A DNA stretch of 64,000 nucleotides from Auanema rhodensis. Taxonomy: Eukaryota; Animalia; Nematoda. The stretch is taken from the NCBI GenBank assembly GCA_964057225.1, contig OZ059899.1:11656001-11720000 (forward strand), read 5' to 3'. Numbering within the stretch: position 1 is the stretch's first letter; every line of letters starts with the position of its first letter. The notes below the pieces were generated by a model, which had not been told where the DNA came from, ran no database searches, and worked only from the letters and a program-made list of their open reading frames with translations. A program made the translations under genes and the position numbers. Shown here piece by piece: positions 3,001 to 41,322 of the stretch.

Positions 3001-6000
3001 GACTCTTTTTTTGGAGAAAAGCCCTTTAATAATAAATTTTCGCATCAATCAATTAAAAATGAGTGTATCTTAGTTCTTCTTTTTGCCACTGCCCTTACAA
3101 AGTTTCGACTCAACCTCATCCTAAGTTATAAGAAATGCGTCTATTTATGTTTATACTTGCCTTCTCTGTATGATGACCAGATGCGAATAGTTTATTTTGA
3201 GCGATTAGTTTCTATTCTTCTCTCACTTCACATCCAGCATTTGGCGTTAATATTCGTTATATTCATAGACATAGCTAATAGTATATTTAGCATTCAATTT
3301 GAATAACCGTTTTTAAGATATTATTTCAAAACTCTTGTTGGAAGAGAAAGAAAGAGAAAGACACAAAGCTTTGTCGATTTTTCTCATTTCTCATTATTTT
3401 CAGTTTTAGATCCTCTTATATATACTATATATGTTTAATATTTCCTGATTACTTACTTAACACTGTGAGTTATTACGCCATAATTACGTACACGGGTCAA
3501 TAGCTTAGTGTAACTAAAAATTATAATAAATGTCATTTCTGCTCTGTTATTCCGTTTTTTTTCTTTTATTTATCTTTATTACATTCACATAAGTTTTCTT
3601 ATCATCTATGTTAAAGATCTTAATTGACTCACATTCCACAGCCCGCTCCTATTGATAAGACGATTTTATTGAAAGTCAGGTCAATATTCATCTCCTCCTC
3701 CAGCACATATACACAAGACCTGTCACAAACCCATATGGTGTCAGTATTTATTACAGTTTTTACTTTTCTTTCAACTTTTTCATAGAAAGTCACTTTTTAT
3801 TATTATTTTTGAACTCATTCAATAGCCATTAATATGGGTAATGATCTTAATGTCTAGAGAGTTGTTTGCTAATTACAACTGGCTGAATTCACTTCCTTTG
3901 AGACCTGGTTTTATCAATCCCGCCTAATTCAAAATGTATACTCGTGTTATCGGATAGGATTGTAATTTAATTCACGGATATCATAATGGATTAATCCAAA
4001 ATTCAAATATCTGTAATTTCATGAGAATTATCATTTTATAATCATCAACTACCCATTTCTTACATAATTCATACATACGATTCAACTGCCGCTTTTCTTT
4101 CAATCGCTTAATCGCTCGTGCGCCGCGTTTCCTTATCTAAACAATTCTTAGTCATTTTTTAGTTGATTGCTTTGATTCATCTCCTTAAATTTCCTACTCA
4201 GTATTTGGAAACTTTCACGAATAGATAACTTTTATTTGTTTTACGCACCTTCTCCGAAAGAAAAAGCTCACTATTTTTTGCATTGATTGCGATAAATGCT
4301 GTTTATTTTTTTCGAATTCATAATCGTATAATTTACACTTTTGAAGAATAAGTTGTTAAAAACACTCATATGTTATCTTCCGCTTTAACGTTATCTATTG
4401 ATTGTTATATTTGAATGTTTTAACTTATCTTTGTTTGATATCACTTTTACCTTATTTTTCACATTTTCATTACTTTTATCAATCGAAAAAAATACTTTTA
4501 TTAAACAATGTATATAGTTTTGGAGGATGCTGACAACGTAAGGTCGTTCTTCATAAGTTCAAACGAAAATGTGTAGTAACTAAAGTTGTTTCTTGCACAT
4601 CTGTCCTATACTAAAGTGTCACATCTTCATGAGTAATAGGTCTAGTAAAACGTTTTGTATATATTCATATGGTCTCGTGGGACCTATTTATTCTTCATCG
4701 CAACAGCTCTCTTTTATCCATCTGGGACTGAAACTTTTAGTTTCACGTCGAGAATATTACATGTGCAAGTATTTCATGCTTAGTAGTTCTCAGATCAATA
4801 CAAACTTCTTCCCATCTTCGCAATGATTCAGCTTCTTCATAAGTACGTAAATGTGCTTTCCTATTATACATCCCACGCTTTATAGGTGGATGGTTGATTG
4901 TGACTCATATCACCACCATTTCTCCGCTTTCATGACACAATTCATTTTCCTTTTAACACAGTGTTGGTGACCAACATTGTTCTATTACATGTACTTAATC
5001 ACATTCTGTTTTTGCATTATAATAACTAGTTATAATTTCATTCCTCAGATTCTATTTTATATTTAAAAGTAGTATTGTTCTTCATTTATGTTATGTAAGT
5101 CTTTTATCTAAGTTTTGGTTACTACTTATTGCTGGTGCCAGTCTCCTCATTGGAAACTAATATAATTGAGCATTGAAAGTCTATCATTATTATTTCTCAT
5201 ATCGCTTCCCTCATAACCTCTCTTGCTGCGACTAATGAAGACAAATTCTTAACGGCTCTTAGCATATATTATGCACAGCTCCTTATTTGAGATCCACGTT
5301 TATGTAAATGCAAGCTACTGCAGTGGTTATTGGGATTTTTGAGTTTTCTTATTTTCTTTTCGCCTCAACAAATCCATTAGTAGTCCACATATAGAGCGTA
5401 ATGGATTGATTCAACCTCTTATTACCTGCACTTTGCTGAGGGGGAGAGATATACATATATAGTGACTCAATGTTATAGCTTGAGTGCTGGTGGGCTATTC
5501 ATTCATTTGTTACCTAAAACGCCCAGTACTCTGAAATTTGAGAACATTTAATCACTAAGCTCAGGATATATAATCCACACCTTTGCTTATTATGCCATTT
5601 AGAATCAAGAATAGTCAGTATAAGTATACTTATGCGCCATTACGCAGGAATCATCTCCGCCCTGTTTTTTTAATTCCCAACATTTGTCATCCTCGAGGTT
5701 TCTGAAAAGACACTTCGTTCAATTCTCGTATAAATGCCAGTGCGTCTATCAACTGCAGTTTAGATGAAGTGACGATTTGATTAGATCGGAAAAAGCGCCT
5801 TCTTTGGTTGTTCTTTCCCTCTTCAATTGTCCTTGTTTTCTTTCATTTTCTATTTTTGATTTTTTTAGATCCGCATTTGCAAATTCCTAATTGCTACTAG
5901 TTTGAGCATATTTATATTTATATTTACATGTTTTTTTATTTTGTTTTCTATATTAGCACTTTTTTGAAATAATCTTTTATAAATTTCTCCTTTCAAACGT

Positions 6001-13652: not shown

Positions 13653-14589
13653 TTTGTTGAAAGTCTTGAAACCAACGTTGCATAACATTGATCACTCCAC
13701 TAGTAGATGATCTCTTTTCCATCATGTTATGCTATTCGTGTCATATTTTCTTAATTTGTCCTACTGGTTTTCCCTTTTTATCATAAGTAAAAGTAGCATT
13801 TAAATCAAATTGCAATTATTAGCTACCTTTCTTTGTGGAATCTTGTTTAATTGTGCTGGATAGGCTATTTTATCTCGGTGAACGCATTCAGATTTTTATT
13901 CCACATTTATACTTAAACGGTTTGCTCAGAGTATCCCTTTTCTCTTGGTTTTATCTTTCAGTTTCTGAACTAACCGTGAATTGTAAATGTTCTAATGTTG
14001 CGGGTCCTACAACAAGTTTTATTTATAATTGTTATTTATAATTATTCATTTCCAATCTAAGAATGTGCTCATTTATCTTTTCTTTCTTTCATTCATACAA
14101 CATTATCACTATTCAGGACTTTTCTTAGAGAGTGTTTTACATGCCTTGGTGTCCACATACTTTGATGTTGGCATTTGTATTGCAAATAACCTTAATCTAT
14201 TTTATGAATTAATTCTGAATCAGAAATAAAACTAATTTTAATTAGTATATATGTATATTAACAATGAATGCTTCAATGATGCAACAGCTATAGCCGCAAG
14301 CAGTAATACTATAGTATAGAGTATGTGCTCTTTCACATTTCTAAGTACTCCAAGCTCTCATTGAATTTAATGAAATTAACTTGTGTGGTTGGCCAGTTCT
14401 TTAGCAATTGAATCTGATCGCTAGTAATGGGTATTGCTGCTGTCTTCAACAATGTTTCCTGTTGGACGGCCGTGAGAAAAGGATGAATTAATAGCCCAGC
14501 GGGAGTTGTTTCGGCTCAACGAAAGCGAATGACTACTATTAACATTCTGAGACTAGATCTATAGTTTATGCAGCTTAATTTTAAAATGG

Positions 14590-31078: not shown

Positions 31079-34000
31079 ATTCTTTTTTGATGTTTCTATA
31101 TGAATTAGAGTTTATTTGATGAAAAAAGAAAAATATATGAATAGTATTCTTCGTTTTGAGCTTAATTCAATCATTTCCCGTGTTCGTTATCTGGCAGTTA
31201 ATTTAATATCATTTCTGCACGTTCACCAAAACTCTCAGTTCTCTTATATCAAGTTTACCATATAATATTTTTCTATTTTTTATAAAAATATATATAATAA
31301 ACATGCTTAACTATATATATTTGTAAATAATTATATTTATAATTATTTAAATGTTTTTCAATAATTTAAATTTATAGTTTAAACAAAATTCACTGATATT
31401 CTCCTTTTTATGGATTCTATTCATGAGATGATTTCCGGATGGAAGTCATACTAGTGCTTACGTCATGATCATCATATCTTCTTTCTATATTAACATTTGA
31501 TAGATAGATAGATATATATAATATTTTATAATAGTTAACTAACTATATCATATAATATATGAAAACTAAATACATAATACTCCTTATATCGTCCTATAGT
31601 TCGATAATCTTATTTGTTTCAATGGCTTCCTTTATCAACATGTAGATACATAGATGTATCTACATACAAATAAGGATTCATACATTCATCTATTCACAAG
31701 TTATATTCATTTTTCTTTAATTTATAATATTATATGTTATTTATAATAATTTTGACATTTTTATTTTATATTATTACAACAAAAAAAATCTTCAAATCAT
31801 AGATTATAACAAAGTTTATAACATTTCATTCATTTTTCCCATCAAAACTTAGATTCTTGTAACTTTTTCCGAAACTTTTTTTTCTCCAAAACTTACATAA
31901 CATTAGTTTGTACTTAATCTAAAATCAAAAAGTTTCTTTTTATTACAAAAACTTTTTTTTAATAAAAAGAAACTTTCTAACCTCAATTTTTAATAAAATT
32001 TAACGGAAATAAAAATATTAATTTATATAATATTTATATATAAATATATAAATATTATTAAATTTTAAGATATAACATTTACAAATTATCTTTGCAAAAT
32101 GTTTTGCAAAGGCATTTCAACTATTTTTCTTCTTCCTTTTTTTTTTAAATAATATATAGTATAATATACTATATCATATAATATATCAAGTATATTATAA
32201 TTTTTTTTGATTAAAAAATATTTATATATAATATATTTTATCTATAATAATATTGTATTGATTATAATTATATCTATTAAATAGATCTTCATCAAATATT
32301 TTAAAATTTAATTAAATTAATTTTAAATTATAATTTTTATTAATAATAATATATATTTATTATTTTGATTATTATAGAGCTCTATGAGGTCTTTAATGCT
32401 ACCAAATGTGCCAGTTCAGCCAACTAATGGCATGATAAGAACATATGAAAATCAATCAAGAACATTTACTCGACCATATTCAGCTAAAACTGTATTTTTC
32501 TATAAAGAAGGTGACGAATATTTCTCTGTAAGTTTATTTATTTTATTTATTAAAATAAATTAAATTAATGTATATATGATGTGAAAAATTGAATAAAATA
32601 ACGTTTATGAAGTATGATAACGAAAGATAGTAGGAAATGAGGGTTAGTGTGAGAAATTCAAGTTGAATAAAGAGAAATGGAATCATATACATATACGTAC
32701 TTAAAGAGATCATACAAAATATAGAGAGAGAGAGAGAGAGACAGAGAGAGACAGACAGAGAGAGAGAGAGAGAGAGAAGAGTATCAGATGGAGAGACATG
32801 TGAACAAGTCGAAAATTGATTAAAGAAATACATGAGTATAAAAGAATAGAAGATTGAAGCTGATGAAAAAGAAAAACTAAGCTTTTTGTTGCCGGGGTAA
32901 CAGGAAAACTAGAAATTATCTTAATTTTCATTTATTTCTCATATATATTCCATAAAAATAAATTAGAAATCATGTGATTCAATGTCAAATACATTGAAAT
33001 GTATTCAAAATAGAATATCATATATAAAAGACAAAAAAAAAGGAAGTTGAAAGTAAAATAAATAAGAATATAAATATATAATTCTATATAGAAATATAAG
33101 ATTTCAAATTCTTAGAAGAATATGTATATGAACATTGATTTGAAACAGCTGCATTCTTGAAGTCTTTCAGGGAATTCGTGTTCCAGTATCAAAGCAACGC
33201 TATCGCACAATCGATAGCTTATTGGATGATTTAAACAGAAATATTCAGGTAAATTAAGATTAATACTATCATGTTATAGTTAAATTTCAAATTAATTTCT
33301 CTTCAAAAGGCTATTTTAGATGCCTTTTGGTGTTCGACGCTTAACAACTCCTATGGGACGAACGCCAATTGAAACAGTAGATCAATTAGAACATCTTGGA
33401 AAGTAAGTATATATTTTATTTTTATAATTATTATATTTCAAATATATATATAGTATATATAGTATATAATACTTTTTTTCTAATTAAAAAATTTGATTTT
33501 TATAAATATAATTACATGAGAAATTCGTTTGTCTGACTTTTTCTCGTCATATTATGATGTAAACTTTTAGTTTTTCTTTCCCTAAATCATATGTATAATT
33601 TCTTTTTTTTTTCTTCATTTTCTTTCATTATATTGATTATATATTTTGTATATTATAGTTAGATATATACATATAGTTAGACTACTACTAAACGAGATTA
33701 CTGTAACATTAAAGATTCTACTAATATTTTTGATTATTCCGCCCCTTCTATCTCTTTCATTCATTCAAATCATTACTATTCTTACTCTTCTCTTCATCTC
33801 AAAGCCTAACTGTGTTTGTTTGAACAAAGTTTTCGTTCAAACTTTAGTAGCATTTTCTTGGAAAATGCTTTTACCTCCAATTTCTCAAGCATGTTCATCA
33901 ATACATACTTATTCAAAATCTAATTTTATTGAAACAACATCAATTCATAATAATAATAATAATAATAATGAAACATCATATTCATTATCATATAAACCTA

Positions 34001-34128
34001 TTTATCCATATTCTAAACGACTTCAAAGGATATATGCTTTAGCTATACCTAAATATACACATAGGTAAATATATTTATATTTATATTATTATTATTAATT
34101 TAATTAATTTTTAAAATATAAAAGTTTA

Positions 34129-34180
<52 letters not shown>

Positions 34181-34206
34181 CTATTTCTATATATAGTATA
34201 TAGTAA

Positions 34207-34237
<31 letters not shown>

Positions 34238-34576
34238 CTATTCAAAACTTAAAAATGTAATTTTTTGATTTCTTCTATTACTACTTACTATTATTTCTAA
34301 TATTTCAAATATTATAATTATTAAATAGTAGTATATGCTATAGATCACATATTACTAACTATATATACTAACTATACTAACTATACTATATAATATAATT
34401 TATAATATATTTTCTTTAATAATAATAATAATAATACATAGTTAAGCTATATACTATGCATAGTATGTATGTAATATATAAAATTTTAAAAAAATATCTT
34501 CTATGATACAAATAATTTTCATTTTTAATTAAATATAATTATAATACCTCATTTTACGTATATTAATTAAAAAATA

Positions 34577-34612
<36 letters not shown>

Positions 34613-37600
34613 ATATTATAATTATTTAATTATATCATATAATATATATTATAGTTAATTTGATTTTTCCTCTTTTCTTTCACTTTTTTTTTCAGATACG
34701 TTGCTTCTTCTTCAAAATATTCACGTGGAATTAATTTGTCAGCATTAGAAAGACTTAAAAAGGCACGTATGCTAGCTGAGGAAAATCTCCGTAAAGAGCG
34801 TTCTGGTGGTCAATCATTCTGGGTCTGTTTACAGCACAACAAACAAACAAACAAACAAACACATTATACACTCTGATTTATGTTTATTTTGATTAATTAT
34901 GATGTCATTAAGAATATTTTAGATATTTAACTATACTAAATTATGACGTCATTTTTTAAATGTGTGCTGCTTCTACTTCTTTTCCATAAATTTGATCTTA
35001 AAACCATTTTTGTAGCCAATTTTTACTGTTTTATATTATAATTTAAATTAATACTATAAATATATTTGTATATAGTATATATATATATAGTATATAGTAT
35101 ATATATTATAATAATTTATATTATTTTTAAATTCTATAATTTACATAAATTGGCATGTATATACGAATATGTGAATGTATATGTGTGTGTGTGTGTTGCT
35201 TATATCAGATAGCTGGATAGTTGATTGATTGCTGTGATCACTCTTGTTTCAATTTTTTTTTATTTTTTTACAAGAAAAAAAACTTTTTTTTTTCTCTTTT
35301 TTGTGATATTAACTAATAAAATAGTTATAGATACCAACATCACCATCGTATAAAGCAAAACTTCGATTATCACGAACACTTGGATTCAATGTAATGCCTT
35401 CAAAGCAGGTAATATAGTAATATAATCAATATTAACTATATTAATTATTATTATTATTACTGTAATTTTAGATTTTTTTTGTTTTAAATGGTAAAATGGA
35501 TATATATAGAACATTATTAAATCCTCTACGATTACCAACAATGGAGCAGTTATTAGCAGAAGTTAGTGATGGATTGCAGGTAACATAACATAGCATTTTA
35601 CATATAATATCTTTATTATAATAAAATATAAATGTTAAGGTTGCTATATTTCGATTTTATACAACAGATGGCTTAAGAATATTGAATGTATCTGATATGA
35701 TATCTATTAATCCTCCAAAAATCTATGCGTGTACTCGAAATGAAAAGTTAAATCTGCGACATGATTTAGAGCTGCCATCTATAAACAATGGCAAATATTA
35801 TAATCGCTATAAGAGTGGAACAGGTTGAAATATCATATAGATTATACAGATTATGTATATATATTTATTAATTTTAGAAACATCATCATCTGGAGGTAAT
35901 AATGGTATTGAAAAGCCACGAAGATTTGAAAGCGCTTTACGACGTAATACTAGAAAACGGACTGGCGCTCCTGTTCGACGATTTCCGCGAACATTACCAT
36001 GTTGGAATCTTTACATTGGGATTTTAACTATATATGTATAATTATTTTTTAGCTATAAATGCTTCACAAATAGATCATCGATCCATTGCTCAGAAACGAG
36101 CTTCTTCCATTCCGGATGAGACGGATTCGGGAAAAGCAAATTCGATCAGCAGCAGACAAACTGATAATTCAAGAACAGAAGATGAAGACATATATGCTGC
36201 TGGATCTTCGGTTGTTCCATTAAAAGTAAAAAATATTTTTTTCTATAACTTATATGATATACATTTAGTTAGATATGCTTATATATAGTATATAAATGTA
36301 ACTGGAGCTATATTTAGGTTCGAAAACCAGCAACAAGAGTAGGAGGATTATCACGAATTCCTAATCCAATAGATAAAAGAAAACAGATTAATCCACCACA
36401 AAATACTGCCAGTACCGTGTCTACTTCAACAAACAAAGCTATAGCAGCTGCAACATCAGGAGTAGCAGCAGTAGTTGCTATCTCAAAGAGTTCTGAATCC
36501 AAATTAGAAGAGGAAGAAGAACGAGAAGATATAATTAATGAAGGAATTGAAGGTAAAATCATTAGAAGACTACTCATTGTCTTCTACTATTTCCATTATT
36601 CAGATGGCTCCGGCGATGAAGACGTCAAAGAAGTTATGGAAACAGATGAGAAAGAGAATGAAAATCATATAGCAACAAATACCAAAGATGATGGGAATGA
36701 TACGGATCAGAGTGAAGAGTTGAATACAACTGATAAAGCTGAAATGATTCGACAGGAAAGTCAACTGAGTCAAGCAACTGACATTGAACAAGATTTGGTT
36801 ATGACTGATGATAGTCGACCATCTAGTTCAACCAACAAACCACATGATATACTAGGTAATCGAATATATAATGAGCATAATAAGCTTTTCAAATATCAAA
36901 ATTTTAGAAGAAGATCTTATAAAAGATGAAGAAGATGATGAAATAACTTTGAAGCCTTCAAATGAAAAAATGGATTTAGCTGAAAACGTATAGAAAAGAA
37001 ATTATTTGATCACTTATTGTTTTCATTTTAGGATAAGAAAAGTTATGAAGAAGCTGAAGATAACGAAGAAATGACAACAATTGAAGAGGAAAGCGAAGTC
37101 ATAACTGAAAAATTGGTTGAAGCTGAGGCTACAGACAACACAGGAGTTGAAGCTCAAGAAGAAGGAGAGATAGATGCTAAGGAGACAACCCAGGAGCCCG
37201 AAGAAGTTTGATATACATACGATATGAAACATACATAAAGGCAATTCAGGATAAATCTCTAGGTGATCGTCAAAACCAAGCTGCAACTGCTATACAAGCA
37301 GCGTTTAGGGGATATAACACTCGAAAATTGTTAAAACCAAGTAAGATACTTAATATAATTTCTTATATAATTAATGAAAAGTTTCAAAAAATGCTGATGT
37401 AGTTAATGAAATAGAGATGCACGATGACTTACCAGCATTAGTTGATGATGAGCCAGCAGATATGAAAGGTTTGAAATTGAATTTATGTATGTATTAGGCT
37501 TGAGAAAATTCTAAAAAATTGTCGACCGTTTGTTGGATTTTGAGAGAAATTAAGCATTTTCCGAATAAGGCGAAATGCAAAAACACACCAATTCTAACAT

Positions 37601-38379
37601 TTCAATTCTAAAATTTGTGAAAATTCTTCAAATTTTCTGAGAAATACGAATAACCAACTGAACTCTGATGTATATTTATATAATTAATATTATATAATAG
37701 TTATAGATCAAGAATTAGATGAGGAACAAACAAATAAAACTCCACCTGATTCAGCTCAAAAAAGTTTGTTATTACATATAGTTAATTATATAATTTATTA
37801 TAATTATAGAATCAATGTATACAATACAAATCAATACTGGTAACCGTTGGGGTTCAGAAACTGAAGCTGATCTGCATATCATGTTGTATGGTGATGATGG
37901 GACTTCATCTAAACTGTCATTACAGCATGAAGTAAGTTTTCCATACGGTGAGCTCGGATATCCGGCAGCCGATGTTTGCATTGACGTAGAAGTACAATGA
38001 GTAGTATTACATGTTGTATATGTAAAGTTTTATGTAATATTCACGTAAAACTTGACGTAAATCCTAATGATGATGACGATGACGATGACGATGATGATGA
38101 TGTTGTTGATCAGAATGAGATTTTTCTGAATTCTGTGTGCGTGTGTGTGACTTTCTGCAACATTTTCTTCAAAAAAACAACTCTTCATAGTCATATTACT
38201 TCATTGATTTTCTGTTGTTTGAACTTCTCTCTCTCTCTCCTTCTTAGATGTTCCACTGTTTGAAAGTAGTTTTTAGAAATTCTAGAACTTTTACCTTCTA
38301 ATAGCTTCTTTAGAATGCAATCTCATATCCATCTCTCTATTGATATTACGAATGTTGCTTAGTATACTTCTCACTCTTG

Positions 38380-38417
<38 letters not shown>

Positions 38418-41322
38418 CTCTCTTTCTCTCTCTATCTCTCTCTATCTCTATATCTCTCCTTCTGTTCTGTTTTGCATCTGCTGCCGATAGCTCCAGGCTC
38501 ACCGTCCAATCTTTTCATTTCTTCCTTATATCACCGTTTGCCTTTTTTAGAATATTCCGTGGTTACAGGCCTCTGATCCACGATTTCAAAGAAATCAAAA
38601 TGATTTCTTTCATCTTGATACACCTTCAGTTGGAACAATCAATAAAATAGTTTTAGGTCATGAACAAAAAGGATATGGTATATATACATATAATTAATAT
38701 AATTAATGAAAATATTATATTAAAGGAGCTGGAATATTCATTGGATATGTGATTGTTACTGAAAACTTATTAGAAGGACGTCAATTCTTCTTTTCTGTGA
38801 ATAAATGGTTTGATAGTGGACAGGTACATTCCCTACAAACAATGCTGTTTGCATTAAAAACTTGAATATAGGTTGATGGAAAGATTGAAAGACCCATACC
38901 TGTAGCAGCTTTTTACTATGTGAATAGTATACCAGATGAAAGTGTTGTTTCACGTATGTCTAAAAAGACATATGACATCATTAGTTAGTTAAAATGATTT
39001 CAGAAGGGAGATGGGAGTTTGTACTTCATAATGGTAATAAGAGTGGTCAAGGTGGAACAACATCTGATATCTTAATCTATGGATATGGTATGGAAGGAAG
39101 CTCAGTTACAAGAGTTGAAAATGATATAACATTGCAAAATATTCCATCAACAACACTTGTTCAAGTAATTATATTAACTATAGGTTTCTATTAAAATAAT
39201 TAATATTTCAGGTTGATTTTGGAGCAATTGGAGATTTGATTAAAGTTCGATTTGAGATAATTCCCGTCGGAGAACAACCAAATTATTTCTTAGAATATGT
39301 TGAATTACGTGATTTAGATACAGAGGAAAGATTAGTTGTTCGGTAAACTTTATGAGAAAATATAATATTATATATAAACGTTTAGAGTAGGAAAATGGCT
39401 GGAAGTTACAAGCGAAAAGAAAAATCCTCAAGCTTTTCGTGAAATTGGAGTTTATAGAGCTGGAGTCGAAGGCTTACATGGTATTTCACAAATATTTTTT
39501 TAAAAATTATCATATTTTTTCTATTTTTAGTTATAAATTATGAAGGAAGAGTTCATGTTGGTGATATGAATTTGCTGGAAAATAATGATCTCTCTGGCCA
39601 GTTAATAGGAACTTTCGATAGCGCAGTATTTCCATTAACTTATAACGAAAATAAAAAAGTAATAGAATATTTAACTTAAATTTTAAAAATATACATAATG
39701 ATTAAGGAATATGTGTTTAAAGTGGAATGTGTGGATTTAGGTCGTGTTTCAAAATTAAAAATAATAGGAAATTTTTCTAAAGAAGGTTAGTTATTGTTAA
39801 GAAATTTTATAAATATGTATATGCTATAGTTTGTATAATTTATATATTTGTAGGAGAAGCTATCATGGAAGGTTTATCAGTTTTACAAGATATATGGGAT
39901 TGCTATGCTCCTGGAATATCAGTAGCTGATCAGGTTAGATCAGTAAGCATGCGAAGATTACGGTATTGAAGCTTTTCAGGTTCTTGCTACTCATGCTTAT
40001 GTTCGAGAATCATCTCATTGTCCATATCGTTATGTACTTAGTCAAGGAAAAGTTGTTGAATTAGATGATACAAAGCCATATTTCAAAACATTAGATTTGA
40101 CAGGTTCAGCATTATTTGCAACTTTAAAACATTATTTTTACAACTTTTAGCAATGGAAGGCTTATCAACAATGTACAAAAAGGATCGTGTACCAGCTGGT
40201 GTTGGATTATGGACCTTAGATGTATCAGTTGAGGTTTAAATATAGCAATTTGTATTTTAAAAAATAAATTTTTCTAGGGAAAAGTTAATAAAACACCAGA
40301 TATATGGTTAGTATCAGGTCATAAAGCTCATTTAATGAAACTGGTTAAAGAAGGTCCAAATGAGTTAACTTTACAAGTTAGTTATATGATATAATTAATT
40401 TATATTTTTATATATTAATTAAGGTTAAATCAAAAGATTTAAAAATTGTTGATAAAGTTCGAATATTTGCTGGTCAATTAGAATCTGATCAAGAACTTGC
40501 AATTCGAAAGGTGAGCCTTCCCTGTTTACGGTATCTGCAATCCCTCTTCCTCTCCCACTCTTCCACGTTCTTCCACTAATTTATATAAATTTTAATATTA
40601 TAGCTTCGTTTATCAAATAGTTTAACTGGACAAGTTGTTCGTTTCCCAAATATTGATACTGAATTCGGATCAAATGATATTTATGAATTCTCAACAGTTT
40701 ATCCAGATGTTTCACCTAAGCCAAGTAATATTTATATTTTATTTTTATATTAATTATACTAATTATACTAATTATATTACATATATTAATTAAAATTATA
40801 GATATTACATTTGAAATAGTTGTTAATACAACAAAATCTACTGGAAGTTTTCTTCCCGTCTTTAATTTATACGGCGAAACTTCGAATTCTGGTGTTCGTC
40901 AATGGGATCCAAAACGAAACATGGAAACTGGGGTATATACCGTTAGCTAACTATATATATATACATATATAGTTATCTACTTTTATGAAAAATAATAATT
41001 TTCAGTTGGAAACATTCGAAATAGATGCTGTTAATCTGGGTGAACTGACAGAATTAGAAATTATAATTTTAGGAGACAAAGTATAAATAATTCTCTTAAC
41101 TATATCATATAATTAAAACATTTTCTAGAAATCACAATGGTATTTCAAGGAAATTTTAATAAAAAATGCGGAAACAATGAAAACATACAGAACGAGTGAA
41201 GGGTAAATACTTTTTAGATCATCCCACCTAAAGCTCTAACATCATTTCATCCTATTTTCAGAACAATTTCCAAAGAAGGTGAAGGAAAACGTTTTCAATT
41301 ACATCAGGTGCTTTCTAATTAA
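30628..41322 (+). CDS. Doublecortin-domain + acidic linker + IQ + multiple PLAT/LH2-domain protein (RP1/LOXHD1-like, probably ciliary)
   Basis: DCX1 AKTVFFYKEGDEYFSGIRVPVSKQRYRTIDSLLDDLNRNIQMPFGVRRLTTPMG; DCX2 KQIFFVLNGK...LLAEVSDGLQVAIFRFYTTDG; IQ AATAIQAAFRGYNTRK; PLAT YTIQINTGNRWGSETEADLHIMLYGDDGTS, FFFCDKWFDSGQVDGKIER, WEFVLHNGNKSGQGGTTSDILIYGYG; TAA at 41320-41322. Confidence 0.88.
32888..32901. promoter_or_regulatory. RFX X-box in intron 2 of the DCX/PLAT gene
   Basis: GTTGCCGGGGTAAC fits GTNRCC-NN-RGYAAC; an isolated GC-rich word in AT-rich sequence. Confidence 0.6.
33865..34064 (+). CDS. Candidate alternative first exon of the DCX/PLAT gene
   Basis: ATG-initiated frame MLLPPISQAC...YPYSKRLQRIYALAIPKYTH(R) ending at AG|GTAAAT. 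Phase 2 matches the exon starting at 34696. GC-box CCGCCCC about 120 nt upstream. Confidence 0.6.

What the first reader, a model, noticed from the sequence alone, without database searches (positions are those of the whole stretch)
37932..38550. GC-rich 28-bp RNA duplex clamps the two ends of a 619-nt intron down to ~58 nt
Seen: ACGGTGAGCTCGGATATCCGGCAGCCGATGT (37945-37975, 13 nt after the donor) is complementary to GCATCTGCTGCCGATAGCTCCAGGCTCACCGT (38474-38505, 45 nt before the acceptor). This gives helices of 10+3+4+6+5 bp, with two G.U pairs that work only on the sense strand. Both arms are GC-rich islands in an otherwise low-complexity intron. The unpaired remainder (13+45 = 58 nt) is close to the usual intron size here. 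Inference: a structural bridge lets a short-intron spliceosome handle a long intron.
Basis: partly seen in the sequence, partly recalled or inferred. Interest (0 to 1): 0.82.

Follow-up and report, generated by a model that had tools for sequence, protein, structure and literature searches.

The report
Conserved helix bridging a long intron
In a nematode gene whose introns are normally about 48 bases long, one 619-base intron has matching sequences at its two ends that can zip together; their core is kept in a sister species, so it is probably a working RNA bridge of a kind already known from yeast, but this is not yet proven.

Summary
RNA contigs confirm intron 37932-38550 (619 nt, GT..AG). 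A second acceptor 18 nt downstream is also used. Five neighbouring introns are 46-50 nt. The arms 37945-37975 and 38474-38505 pair at about -43 to -45 kcal/mol. No shuffle of 1000 matched the end-to-end pairing, and it is the strongest same-geometry pair in the window.

New evidence comes from the orthologous intron of Auanema sp. JU1783 (478 nt, L001:6164-6641). It keeps the outer 13-14 bp of the helix almost letter for letter and at the same distances: 13 nt from the donor, 45/46 nt from the acceptor. Fourfold-degenerate sites are near saturation (44% identical, chance 33%). Neutral transposon ends would not survive that. No other copies of the arms turned up.

Limits:
- The inner 15 bp are specific to this species.
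- The main helix shows no two-sided compensatory change.
- Three other long introns of the same gene (508-1293 nt) have no bridge, so a bridge is not a general requirement.

The closest known kind is the yeast zipper stem, and conserved intronic complementarity has already been predicted in nematodes. I file it as a new member of a known kind, of moderate interest. Earlier notes of this scan report similar RNA bridges elsewhere in this genome.

The parts
37932..38550 (+). 619-nt intron (phase 0) between two exons of a PLAT domain, in a gene for a DCX + IQ + tandem-PLAT protein
   Evidence: The RNA contig of run X11 joins 37931 to 38551 with GT..AG ends. The gene was identified from P0001 and its Pfam hits.
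37810..37931 (+). Upstream exon (translation ends ...SLQHE)
   Evidence: RNA contigs and translation.
38551..38677 (+). Downstream exon. Its first 18 nt (38551-38568, NIPWLQ) are dropped when the distal acceptor is used.
   Evidence: The RNA contigs of X11 and X10 use different acceptors. Translation.
37945..37958 (+). 5' arm, conserved core (helix H1, 13 pairs plus one mismatch). It contains a 5'ss-like G|GTGAGC.
   Evidence: 12 of 14 letters are identical in JU1783 at L001:6177-6190, and it lies 13 nt from the donor in both species.
37959..37975 (+). 5' arm, inner half (helix H2). Specific to this species.
   Evidence: It pairs in the window but is not alignable in JU1783.
38474..38491 (+). 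3' arm, inner half (H2). Specific to this species.
38492..38505 (+). 3' arm, conserved core (H1)
   Evidence: 13 of 14 letters are identical in JU1783 at L001:6582-6595. It lies 45 nt (window) and 46 nt (JU1783) from the acceptor.
38528..38550 (+). Conserved block just upstream of the acceptor. It holds a second TCACCG copy that can also pair with the 5' arm (-13.5 kcal/mol here, -18.1 in JU1783).
38040..38061 (+). Conserved ACGT-core motifs in the looped-out part (TTCACGTAAAA and TGACGTAAA)
   Evidence: Both are shared collinear words with JU1783, which has 6 ACGT within 105 nt.
38067..38110 (+). (ATG/ACG)n microsatellite in the looped-out part
38369..38458 (+). (CT)n microsatellite in the looped-out part

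Best explanation
The two arms form a long-range RNA helix in the pre-mRNA. The helix loops out about 530 nt of an intron that expanded in the Auanema lineage. That leaves 13 nt after the donor and 45 nt before the acceptor single-stranded, 58 nt in all, close to the 46-50 nt introns around it. The helix would work like a yeast zipper stem, bringing the donor near the branch and acceptor region. It also buries a donor-like GGUGAGC that lies 16 nt inside the intron.

Shown: the intron, the complementarity, conservation of the 13-14-bp core and of its distances to the splice sites in a sister species, and the absence of other copies.

Inferred: that the helix forms in vivo and that it helps splicing.

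The looped-out part carries its own conserved blocks, including a cluster of ACGT-core motifs. It is therefore probably kept for a separate, perhaps transcriptional, role. The arms may have begun as the ends of an inserted element and then been retained.
For: - Intron and neighbouring intron sizes come from RNA contigs.
- Helix energy and shuffle statistics.
- The orthologous intron in Auanema sp. JU1783 is also long (478 nt).
- Core arms are 12 of 14 (5') and 13 of 14 (3') identical. Fourfold-degenerate sites of the same gene are only 44% identical against 33% by chance.
- H1 energy is -21.5 kcal/mol here and -22.0 in JU1783.
- The arm substitutions fall on the single internal mismatch (CxA becomes UxU) and on the closing pair (A-U becomes G.U), so every pair is kept.
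- Distances to the splice sites are 13/13 and 45/46 nt.
- Exon-anchored blastn matches run 29 nt (5') and 59 nt (3') into this intron. For two of the gene's other three long introns they run 8-9 nt; past the donor of i3 the match also runs about 30 nt, but through A+T-rich sequence.
- End-to-end pairing is also above shuffles in JU1783 (z = -2.8, 4 of 500).
- Three of the roughly seven collinear conserved blocks belong to one complementarity set.
- The geometry meets the published zipper-stem limits: at least 10 nt from the 5'ss and a total linker of 42-85 nt (PMC12350175).
- Orthologous introns elsewhere are short, 69 nt and about 120 nt.
Against: - Three other long introns of the same gene have no such helix, and long introns are common in this genus. 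The bridge is therefore not generally needed.
- Only half of the window's helix is conserved.
- H1 shows no two-sided compensatory change, so an inverted DNA motif would explain the conservation equally well.
- In JU1783 the probability of H1 falls from 0.4-0.7 to about 0.07 when 100 nt of exon context is added on each side.
- Sense and antisense energies are nearly equal.
- Only two species could be compared.
- No structure probing or mutant data exist.
Confidence: 0.45

Rival explanations
1. The arms and the second TCACCG copy form a regulatory RNA switch rather than a simple length-shortening bridge. The 5' arm would pair either with the 3' arm or with the copy next to the polypyrimidine tract. 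That choice would control use of the two acceptors 18 nt apart, or hide the donor-like GGUGAGC. Alternatively, the helix is the basal stem of a structured RNA hosted in the intron.
For: - Both acceptors are used in RNA contigs from different samples.
- The block ATATCACCG-Y-T-Y-GCC just before the acceptor is conserved.
- The 5' arm pairs with it at -13.5 kcal/mol (window) and -18.1 (JU1783), with an A-U to G-C change at the closing pair.
- In JU1783 this is close to the H1 energy of -22.0.
- Several further conserved blocks lie inside the loop.
Against: - In the window the full arms (-43 kcal/mol) swamp the alternative (-13.5).
- One compensatory change between two saturated sequences carries no weight. 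The whole-intron alifold run showed 'both sides changed' at 14 of 37 mostly spurious pairs.
- No Rfam family matches; the best hit has E = 0.63.
Confidence: 0.25
2. The conserved arms act at the DNA level, as the same roughly 13-bp site in opposite orientations flanking an intronic enhancer. Their RNA complementarity would then be a by-product.
For: - Conservation without covariation fits a protein-binding DNA motif as well as it fits a helix.
- The interior holds a conserved cluster of ACGT-core (bZIP or E-box like) motifs, the densest in the JU1783 locus.
- Sense and antisense pairing energies are equal.
Against: - The exact conservation of distance to donor and acceptor (13/13 and 45/46 nt) has no obvious DNA-level reason.
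- The window species added 15 more complementary bp. JU1783 added about 11 bp of other end-to-end pairing. Both additions point to selection on pairing.
- The two transition differences between the copies give G.U on the sense strand.
Confidence: 0.13
3. The arms are the decaying terminal inverted repeats of an old DNA transposon or MITE that landed in a short intron. They would have no present function.
For: - The pair is an imperfect inverted repeat bounding an insert that is absent from the short orthologous introns of other genera.
- The interior is low-complexity.
Against: - The insertion predates the split from JU1783. Neutral sites are saturated since then, yet the arm cores are nearly identical.
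- There are no other copies in the 64-kb window or in the 10-kb JU1783 locus.
- In DNA contig sets of the same organism at 80% likeness or more, depth over both arms equals the single local contig, while short AT-rich pieces nearby do attract other contigs.
- No clear target-site duplication is seen.
- An origin as transposon ends followed by retention remains possible and is part of the best explanation.
Confidence: 0.07
4. Chance complementarity picked out by scanning.
For: The whole-intron folding z-score is only -1.9. GC-rich coding segments in the window reach -46 kcal/mol in the same test.
Against: - 0 of 1000 shuffles reach the observed energy.
- It is the top of 3170 genomic controls.
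- It is conserved in the orthologous intron.
Confidence: 0.03

Closest known systems
Zipper stems of Saccharomyces cerevisiae introns (RPS17B/RP51B UB1-DB1 pairing; surveys in PMC2536676 and PMC12350175)
   Same: - An intramolecular helix starts a little over 10 nt after the 5' splice site and shortens the effective distance to the branch and 3' region of a long intron, in an organism with a bimodal intron length distribution.
- Here the stem starts 13 nt from the donor and leaves 58 nt of linker, within the published window of 42-85 nt.
- In yeast, too, only part of the long introns have one.
- In yeast, too, structure tends to cover cryptic splice sites.
   Different: - This is an animal (nematode) intron without a defined branch-point consensus, so the stem-to-branch distance cannot be measured.
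- The core sequence is conserved between species here, whereas yeast zipper stems are only 20-30% conserved in sequence.
- No functional or probing data exist here.
Conserved long-range complementary boxes in introns (IRBIS, PMC4174434; earlier Drosophila and mammal surveys cited there)
   Same: These are pairs of conserved, mutually complementary intronic segments hundreds of nt apart. 241 such pairs were predicted in six nematodes.
   Different: - Those surveys used Caenorhabditis, not Auanema, and this gene has no Caenorhabditis hit in my search.
- Most described cases loop out exons to regulate skipping. Here the loop contains only intron.
MITE or DNA-transposon insertion in an intron
   Same: An imperfect inverted repeat bounds an insert inside what was probably a short intron.
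   Different: - It is single-copy as far as could be tested.
- No target-site duplication is seen.
- The arm cores are conserved across a saturated divergence.
Adjacent alternative 3' splice sites of C. elegans (18 nt apart or less; from my own knowledge of Ragle et al. 2015, not checked here)
   Same: Two acceptors 18 nt apart and in frame are both used.
   Different: A link between acceptor choice and the helix is speculation.

Membership tests
Zipper-stem-type intron bridge | [quoted passage not shown] | tested here: met
   13 pairs in the conserved core and 28-31 in the window. The stem is present in both the MFE and the centroid fold.
Zipper-stem-type intron bridge | [quoted passage not shown] | tested here: inconclusive
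   The start is 13 nt from the donor in both species. The linker to the acceptor is 58/59 nt. The branch point is unknown, so the linker to the branch (roughly 35-45 nt if the branch lies 15-25 nt upstream) cannot be fixed.
Zipper-stem-type intron bridge | The helix forms in vivo. | not testable with these tools
   This needs DMS or SHAPE probing of the pre-mRNA.
Zipper-stem-type intron bridge | Disrupting the stem lowers splicing efficiency and compensatory changes restore it. | not testable with these tools
   A genetic or minigene experiment is needed.
Conserved long-range RNA structure | Complementarity is kept in orthologous introns. | tested here: met
   H1 keeps 13 of 14 positions paired in both species, at -21.5 and -22.0 kcal/mol.
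Conserved long-range RNA structure | Compensatory (two-sided) substitutions occur. | tested here: not met
   H1 shows only one one-sided change (A-U to G.U) and a change at the mismatch. Only two species were available.
TIR transposon / MITE | Multiple dispersed copies share the terminal repeats. | tested here: not met
   None in the window or in L001. No extra DNA contigs lie on the arms at 80% likeness or more. Caveat: matches shorter than about 35 nt may escape that tool, and the whole genome was not searched directly.
TIR transposon / MITE | A target-site duplication flanks the repeats. | tested here: inconclusive
   Only a 3-4-nt TCCA/CCA resemblance with a 1-nt offset is seen. After a saturated divergence such a duplication would be erased.
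TIR transposon / MITE | The ends decay neutrally after the element is immobilised. | tested here: not met
   The arm cores are 12 of 14 and 13 of 14 identical, against 44% identity at fourfold-degenerate sites.

The most novel reading that the evidence does not exclude
The intron carries a three-part pairing switch. The 5' arm can pair with the distal 3' arm, giving short-intron geometry with the proximal acceptor free. Or it can pair with the second TCACCG copy that abuts the polypyrimidine tract, masking the proximal acceptor. This would set the ratio of the two isoforms that differ by six residues (NIPWLQ) in a PLAT domain. The TGG-TTA-CAG acceptor motif is kept even in distant nematodes, so the isoform pair would be ancient and the RNA switch an Auanema-lineage addition.
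Probability: 0.1. Interest if true: 0.6.

Novelty: new member of a known kind. Interest (0 to 1): 0.45.

Why it matters
If the helix really works, it is a clean animal example of a zipper-stem-like bridge. It sits in a genome whose introns are mostly at the minimal size (median 47 bp), and a natural comparison is at hand: the same gene has long introns without a bridge.

This makes a concrete question testable: which long introns in short-intron nematodes need their ends tied together, and why? Transgenesis has been reported for Auanema (PMC12100158, seen only in the listing).

It also shows how an insertion into a minimal intron can be tolerated and then fixed. The principle itself is already established in yeast and has been predicted for nematodes, so this would extend what is known rather than overturn it.

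Tried and rejected
1. Rfam search of 37700-38800 at the permissive threshold gave only a chance snoRNA hit, E = 0.63.

2. A search for more sister-species data failed.
- The search for homologous proteins with the ORFs that carry the upstream exon and a downstream exon found nothing.
- The length-matched search with P0001 returned only one Auanema protein.
- P0003, P0025 and P0027 are not on record for DNA.
- L005 starts too late in the gene to hold this intron.

3. A metagenome scan with the two conserved 3' blocks gave over 100 hits. Only ten passed my screen for low GC or a 5'-arm-like motif upstream. None had the WLQ acceptor motif or a PLAT match, so I read the hits as chance.

4. Run X9 (organism C), which I hoped was a relative, is identical over the arms, so it adds no variation.

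5. Whole-intron MAFFT plus RNAalifold misaligned the 5' arm and produced many spurious 'compensatory' pairs. I discarded it as evidence.

6. The strand argument from G.U pairs fails, because the energies are equal on both strands in the window.

7. The weak arm-like inverted pair at 13917-13977 needs 3 mismatches and I treated it as unrelated.

Full report
**What is there**

The window is AT-rich (about 30% GC). On its + strand, at about 32381-41316, it carries a gene for a protein with DCX, IQ and tandem PLAT domains. The closest protein, P0001, is from Auanema sp. JU1783 and is 75% identical over one exon. Earlier notes of this scan name the genome Auanema rhodense. My data agree with an Auanema-like rhabditid, but I did not identify the species independently.

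Spliced contigs of two RNA runs confirm the intron. X11 joins 37931 to 38551, skipping 619 nt with GT..AG ends. X10 joins 37931 to 38569, an in-frame acceptor 18 nt further on. The same contigs remove neighbouring introns of 46, 48, 48, 50 and 47 nt. The published A. rhodensis annotation has a median intron of 47 bp (PMC6469403).

**The helix**

- The arms 37945-37975 and 38474-38505 are an imperfect inverted repeat (pairs I8 and I11).
- RNAduplex pairs 28-31 bp at -43 to -45.5 kcal/mol.
- The MFE and centroid folds of the intron both contain the helix and leave exactly 13 nt at the 5' end and 45 nt at the 3' end unpaired.
- Pair probabilities are 0.86-1.0, also with exon context.
- The first 80 nt against the last 100 nt gives -51.0 kcal/mol. 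Dinucleotide shuffles give -28.8 +/- 3.9, and 0 of 1000 reach the observed value.
- It ranks first among 3170 same-geometry pairs in the window.
- The antisense strand pairs equally well, so the G.U argument for the sense strand carries no energetic weight here.

**Is it a transposon?**

- No further copy of either arm exists in the 64-kb window at up to 3 mismatches, apart from weak chance-level hits.
- I laid DNA contig sets of the same organism on the stretch at 80% likeness or more. The depth over both arms equals that of the single local contig: 363 for 37905-38026 and 231-285 for 38454-38575. Short AT-rich pieces at 38681-38722 do attract contigs from elsewhere.
- That tool may miss matches under about 35 nt, so this argues against a young multi-copy family. 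It does not exclude an ancient origin.

**The sister species**

The JU1783 locus (L001) has an intron at the same phase-0 position, L001:6164-6641, 478 nt long. Fourfold-degenerate sites of the gene are 44% identical, against 33% expected from composition, so neutral sequence is close to saturation. Despite that:

- The outer helix H1 is nearly identical. The 5' arm core has 12 of 14 letters identical and the 3' arm core 13 of 14.
- The changes fall on the one internal mismatch (CxA becomes UxU) and on the closing pair (A-U becomes G.U).
- 13 of 14 positions pair in both species, at -21.5 and -22.0 kcal/mol.
- The core lies 13 nt from the donor in both species and 45/46 nt from the acceptor.
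- Exon-anchored blastn matches run 29 nt and 59 nt into this intron. For two of the gene's other three long introns they run 8-9 nt. Past the donor of i3 the match also runs about 30 nt, through A+T-rich sequence.

Purifying selection on both arms is therefore well supported. A neutral relic is not.

The inner half H2 (about 15 bp) is not conserved. JU1783 instead has extra pairing between its donor region and the block before the acceptor. Its end-to-end duplex energy is -43.3 kcal/mol, z = -2.8. However, the probability of H1 in JU1783 drops to about 0.07 with exon context.

**History**

The orthologous intron is 69 nt in Mesorhabditis spiculigera (L003), about 120 nt in a GC-rich nematode contig (L002) and about 217 nt in Pristionchus pacificus. 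These boundaries are inferred from homology and GT..AG ends. The expansion is thus shared by, and as far as seen restricted to, the two Auanema-like genomes. The unpaired remainder of 58/59 nt is about the size of a short ancestral intron. This fits an insert bounded by the arms. Whether it came from a mobile element cannot be told.

**Against the general claim**

Three other long introns of the same gene show no end-to-end helix. They were inferred from tblastn of P0001 and canonical splice sites.

| Intron | Coordinates | Length (nt) | Duplex energy (kcal/mol) | z vs shuffles |
|---|---|---|---|---|
| i1 | 32528-33170 | 643 | -17.9 | -0.7 |
| i3 | 33403-34695 | 1293 | -21.1 | -2.0 |
| i4 | 34823-35330 | 508 | -11.3 | +0.5 |
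| focal | 37932-38550 | 619 | -51.0 | -5.3 |

Long introns are also common in the published annotation, with a mean of 136 bp and a maximum of 24,877 bp. A bridge is therefore not a requirement of this spliceosome. At most it is a local solution for this intron, whose acceptor is UAG with a competing CAG 18 nt downstream.

**Other conserved content**

This intron is unusually rich in collinear conserved words. Besides the two arm cores they are TTCACGTAAAA, TGACGTAAA, TTGAAAGTAGT, GCTTAGTAT and ATATCACCG. JU1783 has six ACGT cores within 105 nt, the densest cluster in its 10-kb locus. The looped-out part may therefore be an enhancer.

The block before the acceptor holds a second TCACCG. It can pair with the 5' arm at -13.5 kcal/mol here and -18.1 in JU1783, with an A-U to G-C change at the closing pair. 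With two saturated sequences such a change proves nothing, as the many spurious cases show.

The 5' arm contains a donor-like G|GTGAGC that no RNA contig uses. The helix would bury it.

**Comparison with known systems**

The nearest mechanism is the yeast zipper stem. [quoted passage not shown] The start at 13 nt fits, and 58 nt to the acceptor is compatible, but the branch point is unknown.

Conserved complementary intronic boxes have been predicted in nematodes before: 241 pairs in six species (IRBIS, PMC4174434). Other agents of this scan also report RNA bridges elsewhere in this genome.

This is therefore a new member of a known kind.

**Verdict**

| Reading | Probability |
|---|---|
| Splicing-related bridge (best) | 0.45 |
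| Pairing switch or structured intronic RNA | 0.25 |
| DNA-level inverted motif | 0.13 |
| Neutral transposon ends | 0.07 |
| Chance | 0.03 |

I left out any search with a joined, spliced protein model. All protein queries were single exons by reference or proteins returned by the tools.

Noticed in passing
window 38551-38568 (acceptors at 38550/38551 and 38568/38569); L001:6642-6659; L002 about 4655-4672: Two in-frame acceptors 18 nt apart are both used in RNA contigs, adding or dropping NIPWLQ. The TGG-TTA-CAG|G motif that creates the distal acceptor is kept in Auanema sp. JU1783 and in a distant GC-rich nematode. Mesorhabditis has CTGCAG 15 nt downstream instead.
   Followed up: partly
window 38040-38061; L001:6249-6350: A cluster of ACGT-core motifs (TTCACGTAAAA, TGACGTAAA; TCACGTGA-type in JU1783) is conserved inside the looped-out part of the intron. 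JU1783 has six ACGT in 105 nt, the densest cluster of that locus. This may be an intronic enhancer.
   Followed up: partly
window 35203-35222 = L001:3691-3710: A 20-nt block (TATCAGATAGCTGGATAGTT) is identical in both species inside another long intron (i4) of the same gene. It is the only such conserved island in that intron.
   Followed up: no
window 37947-37953: The 5' arm contains a donor-like G|GTGAGC 16 nt after the real donor. Using it would shift the reading frame. No RNA contig uses it, and the helix would mask it.
   Followed up: partly
window 13917-13977: A small inverted repeat (ACGGTTTGCTCAGA / TCTGAACTAACCGT, 33 nt apart) weakly resembles the arm motif, with 3 mismatches. It is probably unrelated.
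   Followed up: no
window 37959-37966; L001:6188-6205: A local palindrome follows the 5' arm core in both species: GGATATCC here and GGATA-cgctt-TATCC in JU1783. It could form a small hairpin that competes with the GGA/UCC end of the long-range helix.
   Followed up: no
window 32528-35330: The 5' half of the gene has three long introns (643, 1293 and 508 nt). They are also long in JU1783 but very AT-rich (19-26% GC), and they have no end-to-end pairing.
   Followed up: yes
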